From IMG/VR virus record IMGVR_UViG_3300027759_006101, positions 186,001 to 250,000 of that record: a stretch of 64,000 nucleotides of DNA. The stretch is one strand, 5' to 3'. Of the stretch, positions 6,768 to 45,425 are shown piece after piece. Positions within the stretch are counted from its first letter, which is position 1, and the number at the start of each line of letters is the position of its first letter. Both the position numbers and the translations under genes were made by a program. Below the pieces are notes generated by a model. It made no database searches, was not told the DNA's origin, and saw nothing but the letters and a program-made list of their open reading frames with translations.

Positions 6768-7352
6768 ATGGATAAATTATTAAAGGTTGCAAGTTTATTA
6801 GATAATCTTGGTAGTTATGTTTTATCTGATAAGTTATATAAGATTGCTGAATTGTATATTCCTCCTGTTGAATTTTATGAGGGTGTTGACAAGAGGCATT
6901 ATAATGATTACAGGGCTCCGGGAAGTAAATCTTATGATGAGATGATGATTTCTCGAATGAAGAATATGCCTAAGAATTTATCAGGTACAGCCGTTATGGA
7001 TGGCAGTATGTATCGTGACAATCCATATACTCCGAAAGAAATATTAGATATTAGAAAAAAATTAATCCCTACTAATTTCAGGAATGAGATTAGTCGTTAT
7101 GAGAGTGGGGATAGTGTAAGTAACAGTAGTAATCCGAGAAGTTTTGTTACTAGTTTATTTGAGTTTGGTAGAAAGAATGGGATGAATAATTTGACAGCTG
7201 CTTTTGATGCTTATGCTGATAGTGGTGCAACATATAATAATCAGAGTATAAAGAATATCCCTCAATTAAAGAAATTATATATGCAGATAAAATCTAATCC
7301 TCGAATGTTTAGTGAGACAGAAATTGGAGATATGTTGGAAGTTTTGTTTTAA
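6768..7352 (+). CDS. hypothetical putative virion-internal protein with shared helical leader
   Basis: N-terminus MDKLLKVASLLDNLGSYVLSDKLYKIAE. Confidence 0.7.
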   Translation: MDKLLKVASLLDNLGSYVLSDKLYKIAELYIPPVEFYEGVDKRHYNDYRAPGSKSYDEMMISRMKNMPKNLSGTAVMDGSMYRDNPYTPKEILDIRKKLIPTNFRNEISRYESGDSVSNSSNPRSFVTSLFEFGRKNGMNNLTAAFDAYADSGATYNNQSIKNIPQLKKLYMQIKSNPRMFSETEIGDMLEVLF

Positions 7353-7354
7353 AG

Positions 7355-7391
7355 AAAAAAATCCCTCGAATCTTTAATCGGGGGATTTTTT
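7355..7391. terminator. bidirectional terminator with CTCGAA in the stem/loop
   Basis: AAAAAAATCCC...GGGATTTTTT between convergent genes. Confidence 0.75.
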
Positions 7392-9150
7392 ATTTAATTA
7401 TTTGTTTTATTTTATATGCTGCTTTTGTATATATGCCTGGGTTTACAGTTTCAGGAGTGGATGTGTAATTTGGCACGTATTGTTCTGAGAGTAATCTTAA
7501 AACAAAATCCTGAAATTGTTCTTCAAAATCAGCTGCCTTACGTCTTGCAAAAAAGGGAATTCTTTTAATTGGTATTGAGAAATAATTTGCAAAGTTGTTT
7601 TTAATTTGATCAGAAACAATTTTATTTGTAATATCCATCTCTGTGTTTGGTCTTGCGTAATAATGATCACTTCCATCAAATTCTAAAATATATTGAATTC
7701 TTTTACTACTGTCTAAAACAACAGCATCAAAAGAATATGATAGTGGATCAAAATTATTATTATTCAAAAAGATAGAATAAGAATCTGCAAAACCATCTTT
7801 ATTAGGTGTGTAAGTTGTACATTTCCATTTAGTGCAGGATCTCATTTCATCATTTGCAGTTTCTGCACACTCTAGCTCAAACTCATATAATTTTTTATCT
7901 TCGAAATCTGGATCTTCAGGTGTAAGATTTTTTCTATACGACCAGCCATCTTTTACTTCTGGGATTTTTTCAAATTCAGTGTTAGATAAATTGAAGCAAT
8001 GGATAGTTTTTCCATTTCTTTCGATTACTGTTTTATGTGATTTTATGCTACTAAAGAGATAAGTAAAAATGTCTTTGTTTCTATCTTTTTTGATTTGTGT
8101 TTCAACAAACTCTTCGAATCTGGGATCGAGTTTACATAGAAATCCTTGCTTAAAAAATAAATTTTGTGGAAGTATATTTTGAGTAAGATTGGTTTGTTGA
8201 ATGTTAAAAAAAACTTTATCACCAAGACTTGATGTTGGCTCTCTTTTATCAATGATCAATTCTTCGTAAACAGTTTTTAAATCACTATTAAATGGATCTC
8301 TTAATTGTCTGAGTGATAATATATGATAATTTTCATTGTTGAAATTATATATTGATATTTCTTTATTATTGATATCTATAATTTTATCATATTTTTGTTC
8401 TACAGATATTTTATATGTTCTTTCAGTAATGTCTTTTGGTAGTGTTCTTAGGAAACTTTCCCAAGCAATAGGATTTTCTCTGAATGATAAAACTTTTGGA
8501 TTCATTTCATTCCTAAAGATATTTAATTGTTGTTTGTCTAGAGCATTAAGATTGCTTTTAGATTTTAATTGATACCACACATCATTAAAATAATATTGTT
8601 TTGGCAAACCTTCATATACTGTTTCAGAAAATCTATTTGATATTATATTTTTATTTTTCATATCTCTTAAAATATTTAAGAATGTTTGAGCATCAGGAGT
8701 TATAAAGTCAATTCTGTATTTATTATTTATTTCATAATCAGGATAACGTATATTTTTATTGTTTTTTCTAATAAAAGGTATAGGTTGCACTCCGAGTTGT
8801 GCATATGCATTTTGTATTATATCTAAATTTGGAAGATCTTTTAATAAGGGTTTTCCAATTCTTAGTATTAAAGTATTATTTTGTCCAGGTTCTGTGTTTA
8901 TATCAGCAAAATAATGTGGTGAAGAAGAATAAAATTGTGTAAGTTGAGTTGCTTTTTCTTGAGATAATCTTTCAATAAAAATTTGTTTACTTGCAAATTT
9001 AGTTTTTGATAGTAAAGTTATGTGATCTTTTGTATCTTTTAATAAATTGTTAAATTCTTCTGGGGATAGATCATTGACTGAAATAGGAGCTGGCATATCG
9101 TATTGAACGATTTTGCTTTTTGGCATTCTTATCTTGATTCTATAATACAT
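7390..9150 (-). CDS. large hypothetical protein with C-terminal Vsr/DUF559-like PD-(D/E)XK nuclease domain
   Basis: C-terminal SFDAVVLD...ILEFDGSDHY...DQIKNNFA...IPIKRIPF pattern. Confidence 0.6.
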   Translation of the reverse strand: MYYRIKIRMPKSKIVQYDMPAPISVNDLSPEEFNNLLKDTKDHITLLSKTKFASKQIFIERLSQEKATQLTQFYSSSPHYFADINTEPGQNNTLILRIGKPLLKDLPNLDIIQNAYAQLGVQPIPFIRKNNKNIRYPDYEINNKYRIDFITPDAQTFLNILRDMKNKNIISNRFSETVYEGLPKQYYFNDVWYQLKSKSNLNALDKQQLNIFRNEMNPKVLSFRENPIAWESFLRTLPKDITERTYKISVEQKYDKIIDINNKEISIYNFNNENYHILSLRQLRDPFNSDLKTVYEELIIDKREPTSSLGDKVFFNIQQTNLTQNILPQNLFFKQGFLCKLDPRFEEFVETQIKKDRNKDIFTYLFSSIKSHKTVIERNGKTIHCFNLSNTEFEKIPEVKDGWSYRKNLTPEDPDFEDKKLYEFELECAETANDEMRSCTKWKCTTYTPNKDGFADSYSIFLNNNNFDPLSYSFDAVVLDSSKRIQYILEFDGSDHYYARPNTEMDITNKIVSDQIKNNFANYFSIPIKRIPFFARRKAADFEEQFQDFVLRLLSEQYVPNYTSTPETVNPGIYTKAAYKIKQIIK

Positions 9151-9232
9151 TTCATAAGTTTTATACGTTATGATGTACTGCTATCCCTCGAAAAAGTGGG
9201 AGATTTTTCTTTTTAAGTAGAATAAATATAGT

Positions 9233-10294
9233 ATGGAAAACTTTATTTATTTAGCTGAACATTTTGACAATTGTGGTGATTACGAGCTTTCAGACAAACT
9301 ATTTAAAATAGCGCAATTAAGTACAGTCCTTCCAAATAATTCCAAAGGAATTCCAAAATATTTAAAAGCCTTAAATCCTATGATGGGAATAGCTTTATCT
9401 CCCGAAGGTTTAGCTATTGAAAAAAAAGTTATAGATGAAGCTCAAGCTAATCCAGTTTATCAGGGAGCTAGTAAAGTTCAAGAATTATCAGAACAAGTTA
9501 AATCTCCTGTAAGTAATGCAAAAACAATTGCTTCAATTGGAAACTTAACAGGTTGGTTTACTAAAAATATTCCCTCAATGATAAAAACATTAGATGCTGC
9601 TGAACAAAAGCTTGATGTGTTTAGTAAGTATCCACTTGCACAAAAAGTTTTTCAAACTTTAGACATTGTAAATCTTATCAAAGATTCAGTTGAATTTTTA
9701 ACAAATATTTATAAGTCGGGATTTAATGCAATGTATAAAAATGACCCAGGCGGAGTAACAAAATATTTAGCTAGGATCGTTAGTACTTTTACAAATCCAA
9801 ACTTGACAAAATATTTTCCTCCTATATTGCCATTACAACCACAATTGATGGCTTTAAATACATTAAGTTCGGGAATGGGTTTAATGGTTAGTGGAGCAGA
9901 ATCCCTTGGAACATTTTATGGAAATATGGAAAATAAAGGTAGTAATAGAATAGAACAAATTCCACAAGCACAAGCATATACTAGCCAAGGAATGAAAGCT
10001 AAAGGTGCCACGATGCCATTAGATGAATTAGCGCTAAAGTATGGTGAAGTTTATAATGTTTTGTTAGATTATGTAAATAAAAAAGCCACAGTTCCAGAAA
10101 TGATTACAAAACTTGGCAATGAGCCTGGAAGAATGGCTTTGATGAGTGCTCACATTGCTCAAGGTATTCTTCCGCCAGCAAATGGACAGTATCAAATTTC
10201 CAGCTACAAGAGAGCCCGTGATCAAGCTCAAAAACAAAATCAAAAGAATTATGTTTACAGTCCTGGATCTGGAGGAATGGGATATTCAAGATAA
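9233..10294 (+). CDS. hypothetical putative virion-internal protein with shared helical leader
   Basis: N-terminus MENFIYLAEHFDNCGDYELSDKLFKIAQ; GTAGAATA upstream. Confidence 0.7.
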   Translation: MENFIYLAEHFDNCGDYELSDKLFKIAQLSTVLPNNSKGIPKYLKALNPMMGIALSPEGLAIEKKVIDEAQANPVYQGASKVQELSEQVKSPVSNAKTIASIGNLTGWFTKNIPSMIKTLDAAEQKLDVFSKYPLAQKVFQTLDIVNLIKDSVEFLTNIYKSGFNAMYKNDPGGVTKYLARIVSTFTNPNLTKYFPPILPLQPQLMALNTLSSGMGLMVSGAESLGTFYGNMENKGSNRIEQIPQAQAYTSQGMKAKGATMPLDELALKYGEVYNVLLDYVNKKATVPEMITKLGNEPGRMALMSAHIAQGILPPANGQYQISSYKRARDQAQKQNQKNYVYSPGSGGMGYSR

Positions 10295-10912: not shown

Positions 10913-10947
10913 AAAAAGATTATACGTTTAGGTAATAATATTTGAAT

Positions 10948-11424: not shown

Positions 11425-11425
11425 A

Positions 11426-12235: not shown

Positions 12236-12251
12236 AGGGCTATTATATCAC

Positions 12252-12282
12252 AAAAAAATCCCCTCATTTCTGGGGGGATTTT
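12252..12282. terminator. intrinsic terminator
   Basis: AAAAAAATCCCC(C)...GGGGGATTTT downstream of - strand gene 12288..12746. Confidence 0.8.
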
Positions 12283-12287
12283 ATTAT

Positions 12288-12746
12288 CTAGAAATCTGAG
12301 TCTTTATCAAAGTATCCTTTCTTGTCATCACCATACATATCTTCATCGTCTTCTGGTGATTCATAGTCGAATTCATCTTCTTCAGGTCCCATATCGAAAT
12401 CATCTTCCATATCTTCGGCATATTCATCATCTTCATCAAATGACATTTCTGATGCTCTGCCAGATTCTTGATTTAGGATATTCATAATAGAAGAAATATC
12501 CTCGTCATTAAGATCGCCTTCAGAATGTGCCTTCATAAGAGAATCAATAAGTGTGTCAAATTCATCTGTTTTAGCATCCAAATCATCTGAAGCTTCGTCA
12601 TCTGGATTGTATACCATAGGATCGAATTTATCGTCCATCATATCTTCGGCTATTTTTGTCAAAGAGTTTGCTTCGCCGTGAAGTTTAGAATTGTCAAGAA
12701 GGTTTGCAATCTTGATTAATTCTTTAGTAATTATCAATCTGTTCAT
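12288..12746 (-). CDS. very acidic hypothetical protein with shared helical leader (scaffold/internal-protein-like)
   Basis: MNRLIITKELIKIANLLDNSKLHGEANSLTKIAE, then D/E-rich. Confidence 0.7.
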   Translation of the reverse strand: MNRLIITKELIKIANLLDNSKLHGEANSLTKIAEDMMDDKFDPMVYNPDDEASDDLDAKTDEFDTLIDSLMKAHSEGDLNDEDISSIMNILNQESGRASEMSFDEDDEYAEDMEDDFDMGPEEDEFDYESPEDDEDMYGDDKKGYFDKDSDF

Positions 12747-12845
12747 AAAAACTTTTTCCTTATTCGGATTTATAATTTATTTTTACAAGTAAGAAATGTT
12801 TTTTCCTGGCATTCAAAATAAAATACAAACTTGTATAATAAGAAT

Positions 12846-19837: not shown

Positions 19838-20344
19838 ATGAAAAGACAAATTATAGCAAAAATTAATAATATTGCTAATCAATTAGACAGTAGCGGGTTT
19901 TACGTTGAAGCAAATGCTCTTACAAGCGTAATGAAGAAATTGGCTTTTGACCGTGATTTTGACGAAGAAGGCACATACGACGAAATGTTTGGGGAAATGG
20001 ATGATGATCGTGAGCCAAACCTTCCTGATCCACCTGGAAATAACTCAAATGTTGCAGTGCGCAAAGGTGATAGAGGTTTTTACGTAAGTGCAACCTTATC
20101 AACAGATAAAGATAATATTTATCTTGGCGAAAAACATGGAAGAGAATCAGCTGGAGGATACATGGCCAAGTTTGAAAATAATAAAATGGATGCTATTGTA
20201 TATGCACAAGAATGGGCAGATGAACTTGGAGAAAAATACGATATTTTATTCACAGTTAAAGATAGAACAAAGCCAAGACCTTTTATGCCTGATACTGGTG
20301 CTATGGCGTATGAAAGAGAAAGAGACGAAAAATCTAGTTATTAA
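19838..20344 (+). CDS. hypothetical putative virion-internal protein with shared helical leader
   Basis: MKRQIIAKINNIANQLDSSGFYVEANALTSVMKKLA. Confidence 0.7.
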   Translation: MKRQIIAKINNIANQLDSSGFYVEANALTSVMKKLAFDRDFDEEGTYDEMFGEMDDDREPNLPDPPGNNSNVAVRKGDRGFYVSATLSTDKDNIYLGEKHGRESAGGYMAKFENNKMDAIVYAQEWADELGEKYDILFTVKDRTKPRPFMPDTGAMAYERERDEKSSY

Positions 20345-20346: not shown

Positions 20347-20378
20347 AAAAAAGGGGAGATTTATTCTCCCCTTTTTTT
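20347..20378. terminator. bidirectional terminator
   Basis: AAAAAAGGGGAGA-TTTAT-TCTCCCCTTTTTT. Confidence 0.9.
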
Positions 20379-20976
20379 ATTTTGTCTTCTTGCTTTCAAT
20401 CACAGTGTCGATGATTCCATATGCCTTTGCTTCATCTGCGCTCATATAGTAATCACGGTCACAATCATTTCGAAGCTTCTTTACTGTTTGTCCTGACTTT
20501 ACAGAAAGAATTTCAAGCAACTGGTCATAAAGCTTATTAGTCTCTTTTACTTGAATGTTGATGTCAGCAGCTGTTCCACGATATCCAGATGATACTTGGT
20601 GAATCATAATACGAGAGTGTGGAAGTGCAGAACGAGTACCAGTTCCTCCACATAATAGGATTGCTCCCATACTAGCAGCAGTTCCAACACAGGTAGTATT
20701 AATTGGTGCAGAAATGGTGTGCATAACGTCATATAATGCTAAACCATCTACTACACTTCCTCCTGGGCTATTAATGTAAAATTCAATAGCCATATGAGGA
20801 TCTTCACGATCAAGAAACAACATCTGCATAATACAGAGGTTCATAGAATGTTCGTTGACTTCTTCGCCAAGGAAAATGATGCGATCCTTGAGCAAACGTG
20901 AATACAGATCATAAGCACGTTCGCCTGTAGCAGATTTTTCGAGAACTGTTGGAATAATCATATATTGATTATCCAC
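20377..20976 (-). CDS. clpP: ATP-dependent Clp protease proteolytic subunit
   Basis: DLYSRLLKDRIIFL, YINSPGGSV, AASMG (Ser), IMIHQ (His) and RDYYMSA.EA..YGIID. Confidence 0.96.
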   Translation of the reverse strand: MDNQYMIIPTVLEKSATGERAYDLYSRLLKDRIIFLGEEVNEHSMNLCIMQMLFLDREDPHMAIEFYINSPGGSVVDGLALYDVMHTISAPINTTCVGTAASMGAILLCGGTGTRSALPHSRIMIHQVSSGYRGTAADINIQVKETNKLYDQLLEILSVKSGQTVKKLRNDCDRDYYMSADEAKAYGIIDTVIESKKTK

Positions 20977-21808: not shown

Positions 21809-22318
21809 TTATGATTTCTTGATTGAAATCTTCTTAACTGTTTCTTTTGGTTCTTCAGCTTTCAGAATAATCTTTTTGAAAGCTAATTTCAAGACACCAT
21901 CTTCTAAATGACAAACTTCAGGTTCAAGTTCAAGATCATCTGGTAATTGAATTGTTCTTGTAAAAGCAGATTGTTTTAATTCCTTAAGATGATAGAAATA
22001 ACTTTTCTCTCTTAAAATTCTTGAACTTCCAGTAATTGTAAGAAGTTTTGTTTCCTTGACAACTTCAATGTCAAGATCTTTTTCTACAACACCTGGTACA
22101 GCAAAATCCAAGCAGAAATAAAAATCGTCTTCAAAGATATCCATTTTTGGATAAGAAGTGTTGGAATGAATAAAGTTTTTACGATTACCTAAAAAATCGT
22201 CAAAAAACTTATTAATAATCTGTTCATGTTGAGCCATGATCATATTACGTTGTGGCATTAAAATTCTACGCTGAGGTAGATTTAATACATCATCTATACT
22301 AGCCATATATTTCTCCAT
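21809..22318 (-). CDS. Hsp20/alpha-crystallin small heat shock protein
   Basis: YPKMDIFE, FAVPGV, LTITG, FTRTIQLP and LEDGVLKL motifs; may start at the second ATG (22303, GGAG RBS). Confidence 0.9.
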   Translation of the reverse strand: MEKYMASIDDVLNLPQRRILMPQRNMIMAQHEQIINKFFDDFLGNRKNFIHSNTSYPKMDIFEDDFYFCLDFAVPGVVEKDLDIEVVKETKLLTITGSSRILREKSYFYHLKELKQSAFTRTIQLPDDLELEPEVCHLEDGVLKLAFKKIILKAEEPKETVKKISIKKS

Positions 22319-22449: not shown

Positions 22450-22947
22450 TTACATTTCTGGCATTTCAGGCATTTCTTCTGCCATAAAATCCATTGGACT
22501 TTCTTCTAATGAGCTTTTCATTGCTGGAACTTTAAGTTTAGTTCCAGGTTGCAAAACATTTTTAGGGTTGATTTGAGGATTTAATTTTAATAACATTTGT
22601 AAGCTTATTCCCTTACGTGATGCGATTGAACTTAATGAATCGCCTTGGGAAACTGTATACACCCCAGGAGCATCTTTCCTTGGTGCTGGACCTAAATTTA
22701 TTGTTTGACCTTCATAAAGTACATTTTTAACTCCAGGATTGTATCCTTTTAATTGCATGACTGATACGCCAGTTTTTTCAGCAATGTCTCTTAAAAATTC
22801 TCTAAAATCTGTAACTTTATATGTTCTCTTTTCCTGTGCAACTTTCATAAATTCATTGTGAAATTTTGACGCTAAAACAAAATCACCATCTTGTGCGCAT
22901 TCATTTGCAATTTTATTAATTTGAGCTAATTTTTGAAACTTTGACAT
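22450..22947 (-). CDS. LysM-domain protein (two LysM-like repeats) with shared helical leader
   Basis: YTVSQGDSLSSIASRKGISLQMLLKLNP...LQPGTKLKVP; leader ends FMKVAQ. Confidence 0.8.
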   Translation of the reverse strand: MSKFQKLAQINKIANECAQDGDFVLASKFHNEFMKVAQEKRTYKVTDFREFLRDIAEKTGVSVMQLKGYNPGVKNVLYEGQTINLGPAPRKDAPGVYTVSQGDSLSSIASRKGISLQMLLKLNPQINPKNVLQPGTKLKVPAMKSSLEESPMDFMAEEMPEMPEM

Positions 22948-36632: not shown

Positions 36633-37055
36633 TTAATCGTCAGCTCTTTTAATAAATCTTGTTTTCTTACTTGGATTATTATGTAAAGTTTCTAAGTGAT
36701 GTTTTGGAATCATATTCATAACTTCGACATGATTTTTGTCTTCATTATAAAAAATTAAGTGATCGTCATCTACTGCAGCTGGACTGTGCATCATATCGTC
36801 AGAAGTTTCTTCTCTAAAATCACTTATAGTTTCAGTATCTTCCCAATGTCCATCTTTATCCACTTCATAAGAATCAGCGTCAAATTCATCTAGAGCTTGA
36901 TTAAGATTCATAGGAAATTTCACATTATAATCTTTATCAAACTCTGAGGCTTGTTTCATAAAAAGATTATGAACTACGTTTGCTTCAATTATGTTGCCTT
37001 CGTTTTCTAACTTCTCAACTAATGATGATAAAAATCTTAATTTATTCGTATCCAT
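36633..37055 (-). CDS. hypothetical protein with shared helical leader
   Basis: MDTNKLRFLSSLVEKLENEGNIIEANVVHNLFMKQAS. Confidence 0.7.
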   Translation of the reverse strand: MDTNKLRFLSSLVEKLENEGNIIEANVVHNLFMKQASEFDKDYNVKFPMNLNQALDEFDADSYEVDKDGHWEDTETISDFREETSDDMMHSPAAVDDDHLIFYNEDKNHVEVMNMIPKHHLETLHNNPSKKTRFIKRADD

Positions 37056-37222
37056 TATTTGCTCTTATAGATTGCTTTTGATACTTTGATAAAAACTTTA
37101 TGCAATGCTTCAACTTCTTTGGTCATTTCTGGATCTTTTTCAAGTTCAGCAATGACATCGTTGATTGCTTTAAGTGGATTTGATTGTGCTTTTTTATCTT
37201 CAACAATATTTTTTTCTTCCAT
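37055..37222 (-). CDS. 55-aa protein consisting almost entirely of the shared helical leader (not in ORF track)
   Basis: Hand translation MEEKNIVEDKKAQSNPLKAINDVIAELEKDPEMTKEVEALHKVFIKVSKAIYKSK; AGGA RBS; TAATG coupling to the next gene. Confidence 0.75.
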   Translation of the reverse strand: MEEKNIVEDKKAQSNPLKAINDVIAELEKDPEMTKEVEALHKVFIKVSKAIYKSK

Positions 37223-37226: not shown

Positions 37227-38087
37227 TTATCCTATATTGATATTAATATTTGCAGCTTTACTCTCAAAAGAACCATTAGAAGCTTTATATGTAAATGAGT
37301 CAGTGCCAATTACATCTTGATTAGGAGTGTATGTAAATACATCTCCAGACTGACTTACAGAACCATTAGCTGGATTACTTGAAACAGAATATGTCAATGC
37401 TAAATCATTAGGGTCTGTTGCGCTAAATGGTAAAACTACTGCAACGTTCATTCCAGTTGTTAATGAAAAAGACGATGCGCTTGGAATTTGAGTAGGAACT
37501 GCAATTGTAACAATCGCTGTATTACCCACAATTCCATTGTCGTTTGTAGCAGTGTAAGAAAATGAATCTTGACCGGCGAAACCAGCATCAGGAGTGTATG
37601 TAAAAACTGGGCTTGATAATGTTCCAGCTCCAAAATCAACATTTGCCATTTCGATAGTGACTGAACCATTTGCTGGTTGGTCTACAATTGAAAACGTAAA
37701 AGGAACATTGTATGGGTCATATGCACCGATTGTAATTGCTACAGGAGTTTCCATTTCAGTTGTTACAGAAGCATCTTGACATTTTGGGTTTTGCACTGGA
37801 TCATCATAAATCATCACAGCGTTTGCCCATTCTGACCTTTGCATCAATGCACTGTAAATACAAACTCTAAAATCATATGAAACAGATGCATCAATATCAT
37901 AAAGAGACATTCTAGTAGTTCTTCTCTCCATAATTGATTTACCATCAAGTTTGGCTTGTCTGTCTAAATACAAATCCATAGAGGCGTTGACAAATGGATT
38001 TTCGTTACAGATAACTTCAACGTAGCCTAAATACCAATAATTTCCTGACACACCTGTTGATAGAGATGTGTTGAGTTCAAATGCCAT
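37227..38087 (-). CDS. Ig-like (Big_9/cadherin-like) tandem-domain protein, likely virion decoration
   Basis: Two repeats of P.NGSV...FTYTP...G.DSF.Y.A. Confidence 0.8.
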   Translation of the reverse strand: MAFELNTSLSTGVSGNYWYLGYVEVICNENPFVNASMDLYLDRQAKLDGKSIMERRTTRMSLYDIDASVSYDFRVCIYSALMQRSEWANAVMIYDDPVQNPKCQDASVTTEMETPVAITIGAYDPYNVPFTFSIVDQPANGSVTIEMANVDFGAGTLSSPVFTYTPDAGFAGQDSFSYTATNDNGIVGNTAIVTIAVPTQIPSASSFSLTTGMNVAVVLPFSATDPNDLALTYSVSSNPANGSVSQSGDVFTYTPNQDVIGTDSFTYKASNGSFESKAANININIG

Positions 38088-38369
38088 TTACTTTTCCTTT
38101 CTCCAAGTTCCACCTTTTGATTTATACTGTTTAGCAGCCCAGCCATTTGCATAAGCTGAAGGATATACATCAAATTTAGCTTTTGCTTGTGCTTTACAAC
38201 TTGACCATAAAGATGGATTGTTAGGAACGTTTTTTCCTGAACTTTTTTTCTTTTTCTTAGCAGAAACTTTCACAAAAACATCGTGAATTTCCGCTGCTAA
38301 ATCCTCTTTGCCATTATTTTCAAAAAAAGAAGCAATCTTGTGCAAACTATCGAGAATATTATTGTTCAT
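38088..38369 (-). CDS. small basic protein: shared helical leader plus cyanophage-type module (KFDVYPSAYANGW...YK.KGG.W)
   Basis: Leader LDSLHKIASFFENNGKEDLAAEIHDVFVKVSA. Confidence 0.75.
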   Translation of the reverse strand: MNNNILDSLHKIASFFENNGKEDLAAEIHDVFVKVSAKKKKKSSGKNVPNNPSLWSSCKAQAKAKFDVYPSAYANGWAAKQYKSKGGTWRKEK

Positions 38370-38861: not shown

Positions 38862-38862
38862 A

Positions 38863-39165: not shown

Positions 39166-39210
39166 TTTTCTTTCCTAATATTTTTTCAATATGGTATAAT
39201 TTCATTTGAA

Positions 39211-39723: not shown

Positions 39724-39749
39724 AAACGGAGGGTTTATCCCTCCGTTTT
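39722..39749. terminator. bidirectional terminator
   Basis: AAAACGGAGGG-TTTAT-CCCTCCGTTTT. Confidence 0.9.
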
Positions 39750-40895
39750 GTATTTTCCACCACTTCTTTTTCTTTTGCAATATTGTTTCTGAGAAAAGCC
39801 TTTTGGATTACTGCAATTAATGCTTCCTTTGTACTTTGTTGACCATCTCTTTTTCATTTTGCCAGTACGAGGAGCATTGTAATCTTTTTTTGCTTCTTTG
39901 AATTGATCAGATGTTTCTACTGGCTCTTTCATAAACTCTTCAAGAAATTTTTGAAAATTATCATAAATAATTTTGTATACATTTCTTCTCATTTGTTCAT
40001 TTTCAGTATGTTGCAAAATTTGTGATATTAAGTATTCACCTTGCCAACTTATATCCTTGAGTACATTAGATGCATTTAAACTCATCGGATCTTGAATAAC
40101 AAATTTTAAAGCTTTTATTATGGATTGCTTATCTAAGAAAGAATATTTTTCAGCAAACTTACTAAATACGGCTGGACTGAAAAAGTCATTTATGTCAGAA
40201 AGAAGTGTGCTGTATTCTTGAGGATGATTGACATTGTAATAAGATATAACGCTCTTTTCATCTTCACCAGTGGCCAATCTTTGGAACACTTCGTAAACTT
40301 GGTCTGGTCGCTTAATTAATGTATCAACAAATTTTGCTACTTGTTGTGCCTTTCTATCTGGAGGCAATCTCATAAATAAATCTTTTTCTTTAGTTGATAA
40401 AAAATCATATACCATCATAAGCATTAATTTATCTGGGCTATCTTTTAGTTTTTTAGTGTCAGGATCTACCAATTGTTCTTTGTATTTACTAAAATAATCA
40501 GCAGCCATATCAAGTATTAGATTGCTTATATAAGGTTTTCTAAAAGTGCGGCCTTTGTCTACTGAGTGTCTTAATTCGTGTTTGATTGATTGAGCCATAT
40601 CATCAATAGTGTCACCACGTTGCAAATCTCTTAATCCAACTTCTTTTGTTTTTGGATCAAATGTTGCTAAAGCTTTATCAGTTCTAATTGGTACAAATGA
40701 AGAAATGTAGTTTTGTAATTTTGATTTTGCTAAATTTTCATTTAATGTATGAAAATATATAATTCCAAAATTAGGACTTACACCAGATTGTAACAACGCT
40801 TCAAGTTCAGCGTCAAAGTCATAATCTTTGCCTTCATTTTCAGATATATACTTTTGTAAATCTATAGTGCCATAAGCAGCAAATTTATACCACAT
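39735..40895 (-). CDS. MWY-tagged protein with HExxH metalloprotease-like motif and C-terminal cyanophage-type basic module
   Basis: MWYKFA; IKHELRHSVD; YY...PQEY; WSTKYKGSINCSNPKGFSQKQYC. Confidence 0.65.
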   Translation of the reverse strand: MWYKFAAYGTIDLQKYISENEGKDYDFDAELEALLQSGVSPNFGIIYFHTLNENLAKSKLQNYISSFVPIRTDKALATFDPKTKEVGLRDLQRGDTIDDMAQSIKHELRHSVDKGRTFRKPYISNLILDMAADYFSKYKEQLVDPDTKKLKDSPDKLMLMMVYDFLSTKEKDLFMRLPPDRKAQQVAKFVDTLIKRPDQVYEVFQRLATGEDEKSVISYYNVNHPQEYSTLLSDINDFFSPAVFSKFAEKYSFLDKQSIIKALKFVIQDPMSLNASNVLKDISWQGEYLISQILQHTENEQMRRNVYKIIYDNFQKFLEEFMKEPVETSDQFKEAKKDYNAPRTGKMKKRWSTKYKGSINCSNPKGFSQKQYCKRKRSGGKYKTEG

Positions 40896-41664
40896 CTGTA
40901 TCTGTCTCCAATGAACTAGTACTATAAGTTTGAGGTATTTTCACAGAATCCTTATATTTCTGCGTTTTATTATATGGAAGTCTCTTTAATCTGTGCTTGA
41001 CCATAAAACTATCGGGAGGAATATCGCCACTACCCATCGCATCAAATCTTGCTGGTACAAGTTCATTTGGCATCTTTTTTGATAATTCTTCTCTTTCACT
41101 TCTCGGAGTTTTTTCGTCAATTTTATAGCCGAAAGATTCAGAAGGATCATAAGATTCAACAGGTAAACCAAAGACTGAATTTCTTACTTCGAAAGCATCT
41201 TTGGAATGAACATCTCCAGAAATATACTGTATTTGAGGTTTATGATTTTGAAGAAACTTTTTCATTTCTTGATATAATTTTCTTCCCAAACCCCATTTTG
41301 CTCTTGTAATAGAAGATTCATCAACATCATATCCAGCATTTCTAAGTTCATCAGTCAAATCCATTTTATTTCTATCTGCTGGATTGATTGGTTTTTCCCA
41401 TTCTTCTCTTCCTGGTCTTAATGGATACTCATTCAAAGATACTAACTGAACAAAAGCAGTGTCTGAATAATCTTTGGCTTTAAAATCTATATAACCTAAA
41501 ACTCTACCGTAAAGATTTGCTTTTATAGAGTAAAGGTATTCATTATAGACTTCGATATCAAATTGAATATTTTTTAAGTCAAACGGCTTAGGTTTAATAT
41601 CAGGAAAATCCATATTTATTTGACCAGAAGGATCAACTCTTGTAACTGCTTCCCTGTACCACAT
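40885..41664 (-). CDS. MWY-tagged protein, GNAT-fold-like
   Basis: MWYREA; LGYIDF...RAKWGLGRKLYQEM...ISGDVHSKDA. Confidence 0.55.
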   Translation of the reverse strand: MWYREAVTRVDPSGQINMDFPDIKPKPFDLKNIQFDIEVYNEYLYSIKANLYGRVLGYIDFKAKDYSDTAFVQLVSLNEYPLRPGREEWEKPINPADRNKMDLTDELRNAGYDVDESSITRAKWGLGRKLYQEMKKFLQNHKPQIQYISGDVHSKDAFEVRNSVFGLPVESYDPSESFGYKIDEKTPRSEREELSKKMPNELVPARFDAMGSGDIPPDSFMVKHRLKRLPYNKTQKYKDSVKIPQTYSTSSLETDTDVV

Positions 41665-41888
41665 TAGCGCTTATCCTCGTATCTTGGAAATAAATGACCA
41701 ACTGCTGCTTCATATAATACTCTGGAAACATCATCGTCATTAAGCGCCATTTTTCTCACTCTATCTGCCATATAAAAAATATCTACACTATTAGCATAAG
41801 GGAATATATCTTGTAAATGATCTTTCAATGGTTTAGATTCTCCATTGAAAAAATAATACTTAACTTTTCCAGATTCTCTGTACCACAT
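41664..41888 (-). CDS. MWY-tagged small protein
   Basis: MWYRES; coupled. Confidence 0.7.
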   Translation of the reverse strand: MWYRESGKVKYYFFNGESKPLKDHLQDIFPYANSVDIFYMADRVRKMALNDDDVSRVLYEAAVGHLFPRYEDKR

Positions 41889-42529
41889 TATTTATTTTTT
41901 GCCTCTAGATAAAGCTTGATAAATGTGATTTCAATTTTATTTCTTATATCTTCATCATTAGAATATGTTTCTGACAAAAGCATTTCTTCAAGTTTATCTC
42001 TGTCAATTTTTTGACCAGATATAGAACTTAATTCATAAGTAAGATTTGGTATTTTATAAACAATGAAATTTTTAAAATGATCATCTACTGGCTGAGACAT
42101 TTCATTTTCATAAGTTTCAAACCAGTCGCTGTCTATTTGATTAGCAACTTTTCTAAATAAAGGAATAAGTTCTCTTTCTTTAGCATCCAAGTTAATTCCA
42201 TTGTCTACCAATCTTCCTTGCACTTCATCAATTTCGATTGGATGCATATAAGTACTACCTCTTTCCAAAAGGTCAGACAAGAAATCAGCTGGTTTGGTTG
42301 ATTGATTTAAAATTCCCAAAACTGTTTGTTTCAATGGAGGTGAAACACTATCTAAAATTTCAGGATAGTCTCTTGCCATAGCTACTAATGTTGGAAAAAA
42401 CTCAACCTCACTTATCTCTCCGGATTCAATTCTCTGATGTAAATTTGCAAGAAGCGGATGCATTTTTACTTTTGGTTCTTCTATTTCAAAAGGAGGCTTA
42501 GAAGTGTCAATGGCTTTTCTGTACCACAT
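41888..42529 (-). CDS. MWY-tagged hypothetical protein
   Basis: MWYRKAID; coupled. Confidence 0.7.
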   Translation of the reverse strand: MWYRKAIDTSKPPFEIEEPKVKMHPLLANLHQRIESGEISEVEFFPTLVAMARDYPEILDSVSPPLKQTVLGILNQSTKPADFLSDLLERGSTYMHPIEIDEVQGRLVDNGINLDAKERELIPLFRKVANQIDSDWFETYENEMSQPVDDHFKNFIVYKIPNLTYELSSISGQKIDRDKLEEMLLSETYSNDEDIRNKIEITFIKLYLEAKNK

Positions 42530-43228
42530 TTAATAATCTCTCCATTGTCTCATAGTAGATGGTTTCTTTTTTCCGTGCATTTCAAATTGCTTGATATCAT
42601 TTTTAAAATCAGCAGCAGCATCAATGTCGTAAACTTCGTCAAATACACCTTTGCCAGTTCTTACTTTAAATCTTATATTTTGAGGTTGCAACAAATGGAC
42701 AATTTCAAATAATTTTTGCATTTGTGTAAATGTTGGAACGTGTACAGCATTTACAGTCATCACCGAACCCATATTGCTTATTCTGATACCTTTGTCAAAA
42801 TAATCGTGAAGAATTTCAGTTACAGCGTCCTCTTGTTCCATAAAAGGTTGTTCAGGTCCAGAATCAAAATTTATTCTTTCTGCATAATCCATTGGGCCAT
42901 AAGCTTTATCTGGCAAGTTTCTGATATTATACTTTTCTGATATTTCTGGATTGTCACGAAGACTTTTACGAGTTTGTTCTAATACTTTATCGATATAATT
43001 GCTATGACTTGAACCTTGATGAATACCTCCAGAACCAGTAAGAATTAAGTGATGATCTCCTTTGGAATGGTCTATTTGATCAACTGGCTGAGGAATATTT
43101 GCTCTGACTAAATCTTTAAAAACATCATCTGGAACACCCGGTTTTTCAACTGGTGTAGGAGCATTTGGTTGTTCTGGTTCCTTTAGCCCAAACAATTCTG
43201 CAAGATCAATAGCAGTTCTATACCACAT
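42530..43228 (-). CDS. MWY-tagged hypothetical protein (H..Y...GIRI...PT..Q pattern)
   Basis: MWYRTAID; coupled. Confidence 0.7.
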   Translation of the reverse strand: MWYRTAIDLAELFGLKEPEQPNAPTPVEKPGVPDDVFKDLVRANIPQPVDQIDHSKGDHHLILTGSGGIHQGSSHSNYIDKVLEQTRKSLRDNPEISEKYNIRNLPDKAYGPMDYAERINFDSGPEQPFMEQEDAVTEILHDYFDKGIRISNMGSVMTVNAVHVPTFTQMQKLFEIVHLLQPQNIRFKVRTGKGVFDEVYDIDAAADFKNDIKQFEMHGKKKPSTMRQWRDY

Positions 43229-43989
43229 TATCTGACCTTAGAAACAAGAATTTTAACAAGAACATTTTCCAGCGCTGTATTTACGTTTCTTTGATTAACA
43301 TTGGCCTCTTCTAATGCTGTAAGAACTTCTTGTTCCGTCACTTGAATATCTTTATTGTAAGGTGAGCGTGAAGCTGCTTCTTCAATCATATCTACCATTT
43401 CAGGCACTCTTGATTTTAAATAATCATCAAAGTAATCATAGAAATCTTGGAATGGAGTTATTGCTCTAATTGCATCATTTATGGTTAAGTTATTGATTGG
43501 ATTTGCTTGAGCAAGATCTAGCAACATATCTCCTGCTTGTCCTGGGTAATTTACATCAACACCATTTTCTCTAAAAAAATCTTCTGCATCATCTTCAAGA
43601 TCTGAAATCCACATAACAGAAGTATCATCTGCGAATTCAGTTGCTTGTTCTAAAAAAGCTCTATCTTGTCCGAAAGTTTGAACACCAGATTCTTGCAATC
43701 GAGTTTGGAAATTATCAATATCTGCAGCATTAGCGACAGGAGTTGCTTCTACCATCTCAATAAAAAGATTGTTGAATTCATCCTCTGATATTTCGCCTCT
43801 TTCAAGTTTTGCCCTTAGATCAGCAAATTTATCTTTTCTTTCGTTTGGGACACTCATACCTAAAGGATCTTGTGAAAAATCAAAATCATCTGTTTGAGCT
43901 TGAACAAATTTAAAAATAGAATCTGAAGTACTATATTTGCCTTGTTTATCTAATTTGTTTGCAAGCTTAAGTAAATTGAAAATATTCAT
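43228..43989 (-). CDS. acidic hypothetical protein with shared helical leader
   Basis: MNIFNLLKLANKLDKQGKYSTSDSIFKFVQAQ. Confidence 0.7.
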   Translation of the reverse strand: MNIFNLLKLANKLDKQGKYSTSDSIFKFVQAQTDDFDFSQDPLGMSVPNERKDKFADLRAKLERGEISEDEFNNLFIEMVEATPVANAADIDNFQTRLQESGVQTFGQDRAFLEQATEFADDTSVMWISDLEDDAEDFFRENGVDVNYPGQAGDMLLDLAQANPINNLTINDAIRAITPFQDFYDYFDDYLKSRVPEMVDMIEEAASRSPYNKDIQVTEQEVLTALEEANVNQRNVNTALENVLVKILVSKVR

Positions 43990-44558
43990 TATTTGCCTTT
44001 CAAGTTATCAGATACAGACCTGCCAGCTTCCCAATTTCTGCACGACCAGTAACGAGCTTTAGTTTTTGGCCCTGGATTATCGCAATTATGTCTAGCTCTA
44101 AAATTCTTTCTTCTATTTGGGTTGTTTCTTTTTATGCTGAGGCCTGGATCGCCGAAGTTAACTTTGATGATATTTCCCTTGTCATTCTTTACATAAACAG
44201 AAAATTTCTTTGGACCACCTGGAGTACGAAAAGGCTTATTAAGTTTCTTGCCTTTGTTCTTATCCGATGCTGTTTTATGTTCACTTTTTAAGTAATCAGA
44301 CACTCCATCAAGCATTTCTACAGCATTAGTAATCTTTGACTGAACCCAAGCCATAAGATTGCCTTCGCCTTCTTCACCTACGACATCTTCAATGTTTTCG
44401 ATTGCTCTTTCTGCTGTTTCCATTTGATTTCTGACCATATCGTATTCGTGATCATAATCATTGGAAGCAGTCTTTATCAAAGATGTAATTTTATCTGCTA
44501 ATCTATGTGCTTGATTGTTGTCAAGTTCGTTAGCTAAATCGGCTAATATTTCTAACAT
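43989..44558 (-). CDS. shared helical leader plus two cyanophage-type head modules
   Basis: Start at ATG 44558 (AGGA RBS); DHEYDM...AWVQSKIT and KLNKPFRTPGGPKKFSVYV...RARHNCD...ARYWSC. Confidence 0.75.
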   Translation of the reverse strand: MLEILADLANELDNNQAHRLADKITSLIKTASNDYDHEYDMVRNQMETAERAIENIEDVVGEEGEGNLMAWVQSKITNAVEMLDGVSDYLKSEHKTASDKNKGKKLNKPFRTPGGPKKFSVYVKNDKGNIIKVNFGDPGLSIKRNNPNRRKNFRARHNCDNPGPKTKARYWSCRNWEAGRSVSDNLKGK

Positions 44559-44559
44559 A

Positions 44560-44958
44560 TTATATTCCTGCCTTGAAAGTAAAATCATAAGTAAAAGGCG
44601 TAAGTCCAACAGAAACAATTGGATTGTTTAATAGTCCAAATGTCACAACGCCTGTAACTGCTGTCCCTGCAGTTGATCCAATAGAGTTTAAGATTATAAG
44701 TCTTGCTGTATCTGCAAATGTTGACATTGTAGTATAAGCTAAACCACTAAAATTAGTTTCTACATAATCAACTGCATCTGAATAACTTGTAGTAGAACCA
44801 ATGCCCTCATAAAATGTAGTTAAATCAAAAATATTAAGGTATTTTTTAGTAAGGGGTGCGACTGAATTGGTCAATGTATAAAAAACTTCAACAATACTTC
44901 CAGATTTTGTGATTGAATTGATTGTGTAGTTTACAGAAACAGTTATTCCGATTGCCAT
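44560..44958 (-). CDS. putative structural protein
   Basis: T/S/G-rich 132-aa ORF, GGAG RBS. Confidence 0.6.
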   Translation of the reverse strand: MAIGITVSVNYTINSITKSGSIVEVFYTLTNSVAPLTKKYLNIFDLTTFYEGIGSTTSYSDAVDYVETNFSGLAYTTMSTFADTARLIILNSIGSTAGTAVTGVVTFGLLNNPIVSVGLTPFTYDFTFKAGI

Positions 44959-45008
44959 AATAAACTCCTATACAAGTTATTTGTTCTTAAATCGAGAATA
45001 AAAATCCT

Positions 45009-45425
45009 ATGAAACGCTTTCTTAAATTTTGTTCAGATTTGGATGAATTAGGTTATATTGAGGAGTCTGATAAACTTTTTAACAAATATGCCTACACTCA
45101 TAATGAATTGTTGAAAAAGCAAATATTAATTCCATCTAATGTAAAATCAACTGCTACTAAAGCATATGGTTACAGAAATAAAGACATAAAATTTGGAACT
45201 ATAGAAGACATTGAAGTTGCAAGGCAGCTTACACAAAGAAGTTATCTTGAGCTTGATACTGTTTTGAAAATTCATAAAATTACAGCAAAAAAATGGCATT
45301 CTCGTAGTAAAAAAGATGACAATCCTACTTATTGGGAATATCTTTGTTATGGCGGGGATGATGGGAAAAGCTGGGCTGAAAATATAATAAAAATCTACTT
45401 ACAAAAGGAATGGAAAATTAATTAG
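45009..45425 (+). CDS. helical-leader protein with ARQL...YGGD.G..WA module
   Basis: MKRFLKFCSDLDELGYIEESDKLFNKYA. Confidence 0.7.
   Translation: MKRFLKFCSDLDELGYIEESDKLFNKYAYTHNELLKKQILIPSNVKSTATKAYGYRNKDIKFGTIEDIEVARQLTQRSYLELDTVLKIHKITAKKWHSRSKKDDNPTYWEYLCYGGDDGKSWAENIIKIYLQKEWKIN

What the first reader, a model, noticed from the sequence alone, without database searches (positions are those of the whole stretch)
6768..45425. Shared ~30-aa helical N-terminal leader on ten unrelated proteins: candidate capsid-targeting and maturation code ending in K-x-A/S
Seen: 6768, 9233, 12746, 19838, 22947, 37055, 38369, 43989, 44558 and 45009 all begin with h-x-K/x-h-A-x-x-L-D/E-x-x-G-x(3)-A/S-D/N-x-h...K-x-A/S. 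Examples: LLKVASLLDNLGSYVLSDKLYKIA, LIKIANLLDNSKLHGEANSLTKIA, LLKLANKLDKQGKYSTSDSIFKFVQA, LADLANELDNNQAHRLADKITSLIKTAS. What follows is unrelated in each case (LysM, acidic scaffold-like, basic DNA-binding-like or unknown domains), and the genes are scattered over 40 kb on both strands. Established: T4 internal proteins carry a 10-aa capsid-targeting sequence removed by gp21 after Glu, and phiKZ head proteins are cut by gp175 at S/A/G-x-E. Inference: this is a longer, Lys-x-Ala-terminated analogue, a portable tag that docks cargo on the prohead core and is clipped by the prohead protease. It would define a virion-packaged, ejected proteome.
Basis: partly seen in the sequence, partly recalled or inferred. 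Interest (0 to 1): 0.86.

Follow-up and report, generated by a model that had tools for sequence, protein, structure and literature searches.

The report
Shared helical-hairpin address tag, huge phages
Ten unrelated proteins of this uncultured large phage start with the same ~35-residue two-helix hairpin, an unannotated module also found on hundreds of protein families of uncultured huge phages, which most likely docks many different cargo proteins onto one common partner, possibly the assembling capsid.

Summary
All ten ORFs begin with the motif. A profile of it finds only these ten in the six-frame window, and their bodies are unrelated.

A profile search of 1.84 billion proteins gave 706 hits. 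Of the top 150, 91 are small proteins with one copy at residue 1 and diverse bodies. IMG/VR contigs of up to 358 kb carry tandem arrays of 2-8 such genes per 20 kb. No copy was found in cultured phages or cellular genomes, and no Pfam or PHROG family covers it.

AlphaFold models a confident helix-turn-helix, a disordered acidic linker, then the body. The hairpin resembles one TPR repeat. Codon comparisons point to selection on the protein, not the DNA.

The "portable tag" reading is supported. Capsid targeting and cleavage at K-x-A/S are untested:
- K-x-A/S is conserved but lies at the end of helix 2.
- The module also sits at C-termini.
- No capsid or prohead-protease family carries it in what was scanned.
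- The genome encodes a true ClpP, and ClpX just outside the window.

Five genes next to the hairpin genes, and a sixth at 49909-50355, carry a second N-terminal tag, MWY[RK]; this tag also lies beside hairpin genes in distant relatives.

Best reading: a docking tag, with the prohead as favoured but unproven destination.

The parts
6768..7352 (+). Gene 1: hairpin tag (about 6768-6866) plus a basic 160-aa body of unknown fold
   Evidence: E 6e-14; leave-one-out E 2e-9. Orthologs P0001-P0016 and L001. TAGAATA motif at -15.
9233..10294 (+). Gene 2: hairpin tag (about 9233-9331) plus a 320-aa body of unknown function
   Evidence: E 8e-15; E 4e-8. Ortholog L001:10614-11633 has leader identity 0.54 against body 0.33. 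TAGAATA at -15.
12288..12746 (-). Gene 3: hairpin tag (about 12630-12746) plus a very acidic tail (40% D+E)
   Evidence: (E 4e-6).
19838..20344 (+). Gene 4: hairpin tag (19838-19951), a disordered acidic linker, and an alpha/beta body
   Evidence: AlphaFold with alignment: helices 2-18 and 22-38 at pLDDT 92-98, linker 39-69 at about 51-60, body at 80-90. No fold match. Convergent with clpP.
22450..22947 (-). Gene 5: hairpin tag (22831-22947) plus two LysM repeats; first gene of an operon with Hsp20 and ClpP
   Evidence: Pfam LysM E 3e-19, two stretches. HMM E 1e-14. Leave-one-out weak, E 0.013.
36633..37055 (-). Gene 6: hairpin tag (36942-37055) plus an acidic body
   Evidence: (E 0.0018). Ortholog P0146.
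37055..37222 (-). Possible eleventh, stand-alone degenerate hairpin (55 aa)
   Evidence: hhalign to the leader profile is co-linear, residues 15-49 to positions 4-37, P 0.005. HMM E about 1. Weak.
38088..38369 (-). Gene 7: hairpin tag (38256-38369), a lysine run, and a small basic DUF5872-like domain
   Evidence: DUF5872 E 4e-4, below cut-off; phrog_27331 E 2e-7. Leave-one-out weakest, E 0.044.
43228..43989 (-). Gene 8: hairpin tag (43885-43989) plus an acidic 215-aa body
   Evidence: (E 4e-6). Directly upstream of the five MWY[RK]-tagged genes.
43989..44558 (-). Gene 9: hairpin tag (44457-44558), a linker, and a basic DUF5754/phrog_7595 domain
   Evidence: phrog_7595 E 4e-13. Homologs without the leader in HTVC008M and C48C1.
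45009..45425 (+). Gene 10: hairpin tag (45009-45107) plus a basic 105-aa body
   Evidence: E 2e-13; E 0.0024. GAGAATA at -15.

Best explanation
The leader is a self-contained two-helix hairpin of about 35-38 residues that looks like one orphan TPR repeat. A flexible, often acidic linker joins it to many unrelated small proteins. It acts as an address or docking tag: one recognition surface, conserved on both its hydrophobic and polar faces, brings a large and fast-changing set of cargo proteins to one common partner.

The destination I favour is the inside of the assembling prohead. That would make these proteins a packaged and possibly ejected proteome. The tag would work like the T4 capsid-targeting sequence, or like the helix-turn-helix by which the P22 scaffolding protein holds the coat.

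Shown: the module exists, is modular, is under protein-level selection, sits at protein termini, is abundant in uncultured huge phages, and folds as a hairpin in prediction.

Inferred: that it binds a common partner.

Speculative: that the partner is the prohead core, and that the tag is removed. If it is removed, the A-x-E or I-x-E found at the tag end of roughly a quarter to a half of members is as good a candidate site as K-x-A/S.

My confidence that it is a partner-docking tag is about 0.75. My confidence in the whole statement, including the capsid destination, is about 0.4.
For: Modularity:
- Ten unrelated bodies in the window.
- 706 profile hits in 1.84e9 representatives. 91 of the top 150 are small proteins with one copy at residue 1 and diverse bodies.
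- 58 of 172 ORFs of 140 aa or more in 15 IMG/VR loci carry the tag, in tandem arrays on contigs up to 358 kb.

Selection on the protein:
- Paralog leaders share about 0.65 of residues but only 0.53-0.67 identical codons at conserved residues in five of six loci (0.75 in the sixth, L021). Codon usage alone predicts 0.49. The sequence after the leader is at random level.
- Polar columns (N2, K3, Q4, S8, N10, N14, D17, E24, N26, T29, K34) are as conserved as the hydrophobic stripe. This fits a specific receptor better than a simple coiled-coil.

Structure:
- Helices 2-18 and 22-38 at pLDDT 92-98, then a low-confidence linker, then a separate body.
- The best PDB sequence match is a designed TPR (E 1e-5).

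Position: the module sits at N- or C-termini, as targeting and docking peptides do.

Pointers to the virion:
- A cargo made only of LysM repeats has no secretion signal, and its peptidoglycan target is outside the cytoplasm.
- Cargo is acidic (scaffold-like) or small and basic.
- The T-even internal proteins are a precedent: diverse proteins that share only a conserved CTS (PMC3012670; PMC7411985).
- None of the ten leader genes has the sigma-70-like GTATAAT at -13 seen on other genes. Four have a distinct TAGAATA-type motif.

Range: no copy in 185,579 cellular species genomes or in cultured phages at the sensitivity used.
Against: There is no evidence that any tagged protein is in a virion, and no cultured relative exists.

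The head genes (capsid, portal, prohead protease) were not found in the window or in about 60 kb of flanks, so linkage to head assembly could not be tested.

Leader genes sit among non-structural genes (GMP reductase, ClpP, Hsp20) and not in the tail module.

The only protease seen is a cellular-type ClpP, with ClpX nearby.

No recognisable capsid, scaffold or protease family occurs among 85 tagged proteins.

Most leaders are acidic to neutral (pI 4.6-5.9 for seven of ten), whereas, as I recall it, the P22 scaffold hairpin is basic.

Leader-only mini-proteins exist (41-67 aa; 55-aa ORF). A propeptide that is simply discarded would not be expected to occur alone, although some of these may be truncated contig ends.
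Confidence: 0.4

Rival explanations
1. The hairpin is an assembly or oligomerisation module that has nothing to do with the capsid. Lone TPR-like hairpins pair or stack with each other, or bind a short helix such as the co-occurring MWY[RK]-x-A N-termini. The result is a multi-protein hub in the infected cell, for example a host-takeover complex, in the way the N-terminal helix-turn-helix dimerisation/docking domain of PKA RII subunits works.
For: A single amphipathic hairpin has an exposed hydrophobic stripe and needs a partner.

Some proteins carry two or three copies, or one copy at each end: P0035, P0037, P0039, P0043, P0047.

Leader-only mini-proteins exist.

A second tag, MWY[RK], lies next to hairpin genes in the window and in 10 or more distant loci.

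Cargo such as FHA and zinc ribbons suggests work inside the cell.
Against: Conserved polar surface positions across dozens of paralogs suggest one fixed receptor rather than loose self-association.

LysM cargo has no obvious role in a cytoplasmic hub.

No interaction has been modelled or measured.
Confidence: 0.25
2. The tag is a recognition element for the phage's own proteostasis machinery: ClpX/ClpP, or GroEL/Hsp20/DnaJ-like. It marks a set of phage proteins for timed degradation, processing or chaperoning.
For: The genome encodes a canonical ClpP at window 20377-20961 (Pfam CLP_protease, 227 bits). It also encodes a ClpX with a zinc-binding N-terminus and an IGF-like loop just outside the window, at L038:4627-5982 (E 2e-56 to ClpX structures). 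GroEL, Hsp20 and a weak DnaJ hit are also present.

From general knowledge, ClpX reads degrons at either terminus. The module occurs at N- or C-termini.

The clpP operon starts with a tagged gene, and the clpX operon contains one.
Against: From general knowledge, known ClpX degrons are short unstructured peptides, not confident helical hairpins.

With about one tagged gene per 5-10 kb, adjacency to clp genes is expected by chance.

I did not check whether the other tag-bearing phages encode ClpXP.
Confidence: 0.12
3. The tag sorts proteins to another destination in the infected cell, such as a phage-built compartment or the envelope, rather than to the capsid.
For: Two different N-terminal tags in the same gene arrays look like a sorting code.

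LysM cargo must leave the cytoplasm.

Related huge-phage loci carry a prepilin-type gene of the kind I recall as common in Planctomycetota, whose cells are compartmentalised (the host is an inference).
Against: No shell, translocon or secretion genes were identified.

The hairpin has no hydrophobic signal-peptide core.
Confidence: 0.1
4. The shared 5' end is conserved as DNA or RNA (a recombination site, promoter or translation enhancer), or the motif is a compositional or chance artefact of an AT-rich genome.
For: The first codons are A-rich (ATG AAT AAA AGA CAA) and could favour translation initiation.

In one locus, L021, the fraction of identical codons is higher, 0.75.
Against: The window's ten copies have diverged too far for DNA-level conservation (mean column identity 36%).

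Synonymous sites are close to random in most paralog sets (0.53-0.67 against an expected 0.49).

The HMM finds nothing else in six frames of the same AT-rich sequence.

Copies at C-termini cannot be 5' signals.
Confidence: 0.03

Closest known systems
T4 capsid-targeting sequence (CTS) of internal proteins IPI-III and Alt
   Same: A short N-terminal sequence is the only thing shared by otherwise diverse, fast-evolving proteins, and it addresses them to one destination (PMC3012670, PMC7411985).
   Different: The CTS is about 10-20 residues and is cut off by gp21 after Glu. Here the tag is a folded hairpin of about 38 residues. It also occurs at C-termini and on its own. No gp21-type protease was seen, and packaging and cleavage are untested.
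N-terminal propeptides of phiKZ/SPN3US head and ejection proteins (cleavage motif A-X-E)
   Same: These giant phages have many head proteins, including high-copy ejection proteins, whose N-terminal propeptides are thought to target them to the prohead. The hairpin family's frequent ending ...L-A-Q-E matches the A-X-E motif, and AQE is an actual SPN3US site. A-x-E occurs in 20 of 82 members and A-x-[DE] in 39 of 82.
   Different: SPN3US propeptides are 111-130 residues long, and I know of no reported common sequence among them. Here one compact motif is shared by dozens of genes. The A-x-E ending is not universal. No homolog of that protease was found.
C-terminal helix-turn-helix coat-binding domain of the P22 scaffolding protein
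   Same: A terminal helix-turn-helix of about 30-40 residues that is essential for coat binding (10.1101/2022.12.13.520362, PMC9965877). From general knowledge, it also suffices to load foreign cargo into P22 capsids (a P22 nanocage review, PMC9962691, was listed but not read).
   Different: No sequence similarity was detected: the PDB profile search listed TPRs and Nup93 but no scaffolding protein. As I recall it, the P22 hairpin is basic; most leaders here are acidic to neutral.
TPR repeats of the TPR_10/TPR_12 (kinesin-light-chain) type
   Same: The leader profile hits many TPR_10/12 proteins, with one match per repeat. Its best PDB match is a designed TPR. The pattern A-x-x-L-x-x-x-G-x-Y-x-E-A and the predicted hairpin fit one repeat.
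   Different: There is one unit only, at a terminus, not a solenoid. No leader reaches any Pfam TPR model. Homology and convergence cannot be told apart.
Delivery or trafficking domains of polymorphic toxins, and cargo-loading peptides of encapsulins
   Same: The architecture is a conserved terminal address plus a variable payload. Encapsulin peptides load cargo into HK97-fold shells from either terminus (general knowledge).
   Different: No sequence relation. Payloads here are mostly orphan, small and often disordered. No toxin or enzyme domains were seen.

Membership tests
T4-type capsid-targeting sequence / internal proteins | Short N-terminal sequence shared by otherwise unrelated proteins of one phage | tested here: met
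   Ten of ten proteins share the leader and their bodies are unrelated.
T4-type capsid-targeting sequence / internal proteins | Removal by the prohead protease at a defined site (L/I-x-E in T4, A-x-E in SPN3US) | tested here: inconclusive
   An I-A-E, A-Q-E or A-S-E ending occurs in 4 of the 10 window leaders and A-x-E in 20 of 82 family members. Cleavage itself cannot be tested here.
T4-type capsid-targeting sequence / internal proteins | A prohead serine protease (gp21/gp175 type) encoded by the phage | tested here: inconclusive
   All 'head maturation protease' PHROG hits in the window trace to one canonical ClpP. Only the top 25 of 85 PHROG families were visible, and most of the genome was not seen.
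T4-type capsid-targeting sequence / internal proteins | Tagged proteins present in the prohead or virion | not testable with these tools
   No cultured relative and no proteome.
TPR repeat proteins (Pfam clan TPR) | Match to a Pfam TPR model at or above its gathering score | tested here: not met
   No TPR hit for the ten window proteins at E<=0.1. Among 85 family members only one true TPR protein hits.
TPR repeat proteins (Pfam clan TPR) | Tandem array of repeats forming a solenoid | tested here: not met
   A single copy at a terminus in 91 of the top 150 hits; at most two or three well-separated copies.
TPR repeat proteins (Pfam clan TPR) | 34-residue helix-turn-helix with the TPR residue pattern | tested here: met
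   The profile matches TPR_10/12 repeats and a designed TPR (E 1e-5). AlphaFold gives a hairpin.
P22-type scaffolding coat-binding helix-turn-helix | Terminal helix-turn-helix of 30-40 residues | tested here: met
   (prediction) and the terminal positions.
P22-type scaffolding coat-binding helix-turn-helix | Sequence relation or a basic binding face | tested here: not met
   No scaffolding protein among the PDB profile hits at E<=10. Leader pI is 4.6-5.9 in seven of ten.
RiPP precursor leaders (Nif11/NHLP type) | Conserved leader, a short hypervariable core, and a double-glycine type cleavage site | tested here: not met
   Bodies are 55-320 aa and include folded domains (LysM; alpha/beta body). 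The junction is [KR]-h-[AS]-Q-[ED], not GG.
Sec/Tat signal peptides | Hydrophobic h-region after a basic n-region | tested here: not met
   The consensus is amphipathic and polar-rich, with no hydrophobic stretch.

The most novel reading that the evidence does not exclude
An uncultured clade of huge phages uses a two-tag protein-sorting code. The tags are a 38-residue TPR-like hairpin and a short MWY[RK]-x-A N-terminus. Up to a third of the genes in some regions carry the hairpin. The code would send a large, rapidly diversifying arsenal of small effectors to one destination: either the capsid, for co-injection with the DNA, or a phage-built assembly in the cell. If so, it is a general way for phages to add new cargo simply by fusing a tag.
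Probability: 0.3. Interest if true: 0.85.

Novelty: new variant of a known kind. Interest (0 to 1): 0.7.

Why it matters
If the hairpin is an address tag, one short profile would pick out a whole functional class of proteins from metagenomic huge-phage genomes in which almost nothing else can be annotated. That class would probably be packaged or co-delivered effectors.

It would also explain how these phages gain and swap such proteins, namely by fusing a tag to any domain. It would provide a compact, natural handle for loading foreign proteins into large capsids or phage assemblies.

The co-occurring second tag and the phage-encoded ClpXP, GroEL and Hsp20 suggest an organised protein-handling system that has not been described.

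If the hairpin is only an oligomerisation motif, the result is more modest. It would still be a large new domain family specific to viruses.

Tried and rejected
Searches that found nothing or led nowhere:
- Pfam and PHROG on the ten proteins gave no family for the leader. Scanning the leaders alone against PHROGs gave only weak, recurrent hits to phrog_2608 'transcriptional activator' (E 0.15-0.3; 5e-4 once). I treat these as chance similarity between helices.
- Megablast and tblastn against cultured phages found no relative of the window and no copy of the consensus leader.
It worked with the consensus family.
- The scan of cellular genomes found no confirmed copy.
- The ~1000-aa proteins with a C-terminal module have no Pfam, PHROG or PDB match, and the Atlas gave only alpha-solenoid-like leads.
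- The 586-aa gene between two leader genes has no PDB match. It is probably not a capsid protein, because it carries a C-terminal nuclease-like motif.
- Foldseek on the 19838 model found nothing significant in PDB or BFVD.
- A single-sequence AlphaFold run of the LysM protein was poor.
- Walking about 60 kb beyond the window did not reach the head genes.
- A region search for the MWYR tag returned only an ortholog.
- A literature search for a description of this motif found none.
- tRNA and Rfam scans of the window were empty.

Ideas rejected:
- DNA-level conservation, by codon analysis.
- Signal peptide.
- RiPP leader.
- Chance or compositional artefact.

Full report
**1. The observation**

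The ten coordinates are true ORF starts. None of them needs read-through of a stop. For 44558 the start is the ATG that follows the stop of the upstream gene.

Each product opens, within its first ten residues, with h-x-x-h-A-x-x-L-D/E-x-x-G-x-Y-x-x-A/S-D/N-x-h-x-K-h-A/S.

An HMM of the 32 core columns was scored against every stop-to-stop segment of 40 aa or more in six frames. It finds these ten (E 1e-12 to 1e-14) and nothing else below E 0.02.

In leave-one-out tests the omitted copy outranks all unrelated segments in nine of ten cases. Six copies are strong. Four are weak: 22947, 37055, 38369 and 45009. The bodies after residue 40 are unrelated to each other.

A 55-aa ORF at 37055-37222(-) may be an eleventh, stand-alone copy.

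**2. What the genome is**

The window has 29-42% G+C and no close relative among 50,697 phage records.

It encodes ThyX, a RuvB-like ATPase, GroEL, a Y-family polymerase, GMP reductase, ClpP, Hsp20, NusG, sigma factors and DNA methyltransferases.

Identical genes lie on JGI contigs of 161-200 kb and more.
- To the right of the window come an array of Laminin_G_3 paralogs and giant proteins of 1513, 2722, 1048, 997 and 799 aa. This looks like a tail-fibre or baseplate region.
- Beyond that lie ClpX, a weak DnaJ-like hit, PhoH and GyrB.
- To the left lie rIIA/rIIB-like genes.

So this is a large, uncultured tailed phage. Capsid, portal and prohead protease were not found in the sequence I could reach.

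**3. The tag outside the window**

No Pfam or PHROG family covers the leader.

A profile of 13 leaders, searched against 1.84 billion representative proteins, gave 706 hits at E<=1e-3. The top 150 break down as follows:
- 91 are small proteins (40-330 aa) with a single copy that starts at residue 1.
- About 45 are ordinary cellular TPR_10/TPR_12 repeat proteins, matched once per repeat.
- About a dozen carry two or three copies, including copies at the very C-terminus.

The main viral family has a strikingly constant leader, with consensus MNKRQIIASLNKIANELDNSGLYKEANSLTNVMKKLAQE, on bodies that share nothing.

Searching IMG/VR with this consensus returned 25 loci from contigs of up to 358 kb. 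They hold 2-8 tagged genes per 20 kb, often in tandem. 58 of 172 ORFs of 140 aa or more carry the tag.

Tandem paralogs of about 910 and 1000 aa carry the module as their last 30 residues. In the window's own genome, outside the window, there are a 250-aa protein tagged at its N-terminus and a 193-aa protein tagged at its C-terminus.

No copy was confirmed in 185,579 cellular species genomes, and none was found in cultured phages.

**4. Nature of the module**

AlphaFold with a 68-row alignment models the 19838 protein in three parts:
- helix 2-18, a turn, and helix 22-38, at pLDDT 92-98;
- a low-confidence acidic linker, residues 39-69;
- a separate alpha/beta body with no known fold match.

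The profile's best hit among solved structures is a designed TPR (E 1e-5), followed by one hairpin of Nup93. Yet no leader reaches a Pfam TPR model. I therefore describe it as an orphan TPR-like hairpin, and not as a member of that family.

Within one genome, paralog leaders share about 65% of residues. At conserved residues they share only 53-67% identical codons in five of six loci (75% in L021), against 49% expected from codon usage. The next 37 residues share 5-11%. Between orthologs the leader is usually better kept than the body, for example 0.97 against 0.29. The constraint therefore acts on the protein.

Both the hydrophobic stripe and many polar positions are nearly invariant. This fits a fixed binding partner.

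**5. Modularity**

At least three window bodies have homologs elsewhere that lack the leader:
- LysM repeats.
- A DUF5754/phrog_7595 domain. It stands alone in Pelagibacter phage HTVC008M (133 aa) and phage C48C1 (105 aa), each with a different N-terminus.
- A DUF5872-like domain.

Across 85 tagged proteins, the only Pfam domains are FHA (2), zinc ribbon (2) and one true TPR. The cargo is mostly small, hydrophilic and orphan. The first 25 residues after the tag are enriched in D, E and P.

**6. The cleavage idea**

The tag end is conserved. [KR]-h-[AS] occurs in 82 of 85 members, followed by Q in 39 of 82 and by an acidic residue at +2 in 39 of 82. A-x-E occurs in 20 of 82.

If a prohead protease does act here, the A-Q-E or I-A-E ending is at least as good a candidate. 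It matches the A-X-E rule of SPN3US, where AQE is a real site, and the T4 rule of cutting after Glu. It is present in only a quarter to a half of members.

Copies at C-termini and leader-only mini-proteins do not fit an obligatory N-terminal propeptide.

**7. Context**

The ten genes are scattered among non-structural genes. Several are single-gene units. One heads the operon that ends in clpP, and one is convergent with it.

Four leader genes (6768, 9233, 22947, 45009) have a TAGAATA/GAGAATA motif upstream, at -15 in three of them and at -43 for 22947. None of the ten has the GTATAAT at about -13 found on seven other genes. That hints at a different expression class but is weak evidence.

The tail-like region has no clear tags; its only hit is one weak N-terminal match on a 91-aa ORF.

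**8. A second tag**

Six window genes begin with MWY[RK]: five consecutive ones at 39735-43228(-), directly downstream of leader genes 8 and 9, and 49909-50355(-). The five consecutive genes have A, or S in one case, at position 6; 49909-50355 begins MWYRYS.

The same start occurs on about 30 ORFs in 13 other loci that had been fetched only because they contain the hairpin. By chance a given start would read MWY[RK] about once in 20,000.

Two different N-terminal tags that co-occur in divergent lineages strengthen the idea of a sorting or assembly code.

**9. Interpretation**

The best-supported statement is that the hairpin is a portable docking tag for one common partner (about 0.75).

The capsid interior is the destination I favour, at about 0.4 for the whole chain. 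The reasons are the T4 and P22 precedents, the LysM cargo without a secretion signal, and the acidic and basic cargo types. Nothing here shows packaging.

The rivals are:
- a capsid-independent assembly hub, possibly pairing with the MWY[RK] termini (0.25);
- a tag read by the phage's ClpXP or chaperones (0.12);
- sorting to another cellular destination (0.1);
- DNA-level conservation or chance (0.03, largely refuted).

**10. Novelty**

The kind of thing is known from T4: a conserved terminal address on diverse phage proteins. This module is new in form, as a folded TPR-like hairpin that is used at either terminus and also stands alone. It is new in scale and is unannotated in Pfam and PHROGs. 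It comes with a second tag.

I rate it a new variant of a known kind, with interest 0.7.

Noticed in passing
window 39735-40895(-), 40885-41664(-), 41664-41888(-), 41888-42529(-), 42530-43228(-), 49909-50355(-); also L006/L007, L009, L010, L017, L021, L023, L024, L026, L028, L029, L001:7571, L038:2410-2892: A second shared N-terminal tag, MWY[RK]-x-A/S, on otherwise unrelated proteins. Five are consecutive genes directly downstream of two hairpin-tagged genes. The tag co-occurs with hairpin arrays in distant huge-phage contigs.
   Followed up: partly
window 20377-20961(-), 21809-22318(-), 28976-30589(+); L038:4627-5982(+), L038:1382-2374(-): The phage carries a proteostasis kit: canonical ClpP, Hsp20 and GroEL in the window, and ClpX (zinc-binding N-terminus, IGF-like loop; E 2e-56 to ClpX structures) plus a weak DnaJ-like hit just outside it.
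   Followed up: partly
window 39735-39850 (C-terminus of the 386-aa protein), 43989-44250, 38088-38230: Three different small basic domains end tagged proteins here; two of them contain cysteines. In marine cyanophages, pelagiphages and roseophages they occur as stand-alone mini-proteins. They include DUF5754/phrog_7595-like and DUF5872-like domains and a KYK-x-S-I-x-C-x-x-P-K-G-F-S-Q motif.
   Followed up: partly
upstream of window genes 4069, 10912(-), 12846, 23068, 30640, 39211 (GTATAAT at -11 to -17); 6768, 9233, 45009, 49909(-) (TAGAATA/GAGAATA at -15): There are two promoter-like motif classes placed so close to the ATG that the mRNAs would have almost no leader. Hairpin genes use only the TAGAATA type. 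Many hairpin genes in IMG/VR loci, and window gene 12746, share another upstream element, TTGTAAAAATA...ACC...AAGGA.
   Followed up: partly
window 37227-38087(-): This 286-aa protein, between two hairpin genes, has tandem repeats with the pattern FTYTP...G-x-D-S-F-x-Y, which I recall as typical of bacterial Ig-like/cadherin-like domains. It has only a weak PDB hit, to a phage collar sheath protein (E 0.16). It was not scanned against Pfam.
   Followed up: partly
window 7390-9150(-): This 586-aa protein has a very constant length of about 590-600 aa in 87 metagenomic clusters and no Pfam or PDB match. Its C-terminal motif E-F-D-G-x-x-H...K-x-x-x-D...R resembles Vsr/DUF559-type nucleases (from memory). 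It lies between two hairpin genes here and next to them in L001.
   Followed up: partly
window 61588-63521(-) and L033-L037: A tandem array of nine or more Laminin_G_3 paralogs of about 220-250 aa lies next to giant proteins (1803 aa in the window; 1513, 2722, 1048, 997 and 799 aa beyond it). It is probably a diversified tail-fibre or baseplate region. The N-terminus of the 1803-aa protein weakly matches a cyanophage baseplate wedge gene.
   Followed up: partly
L007:1726-2694(-) and homologs in 10 IMG/VR loci: The commonest untagged neighbour of hairpin arrays in the other lineage is a protein with a prepilin-type N-terminal helix and an H-X9-DG-like C-terminus. I recall this type as hugely expanded in Planctomycetota, so it is a possible clue to the host.
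   Followed up: no
L039:17150-20628: rIIA-like (HATPase_c_3) and rIIB-like (Phage_T4_rIIB) genes lie about 7-10 kb to the left of the window.
   Followed up: no
window 53768-54592(-): A carbon-nitrogen hydrolase (nitrilase-superfamily) gene sits at the end of the tail-like operon.
   Followed up: no
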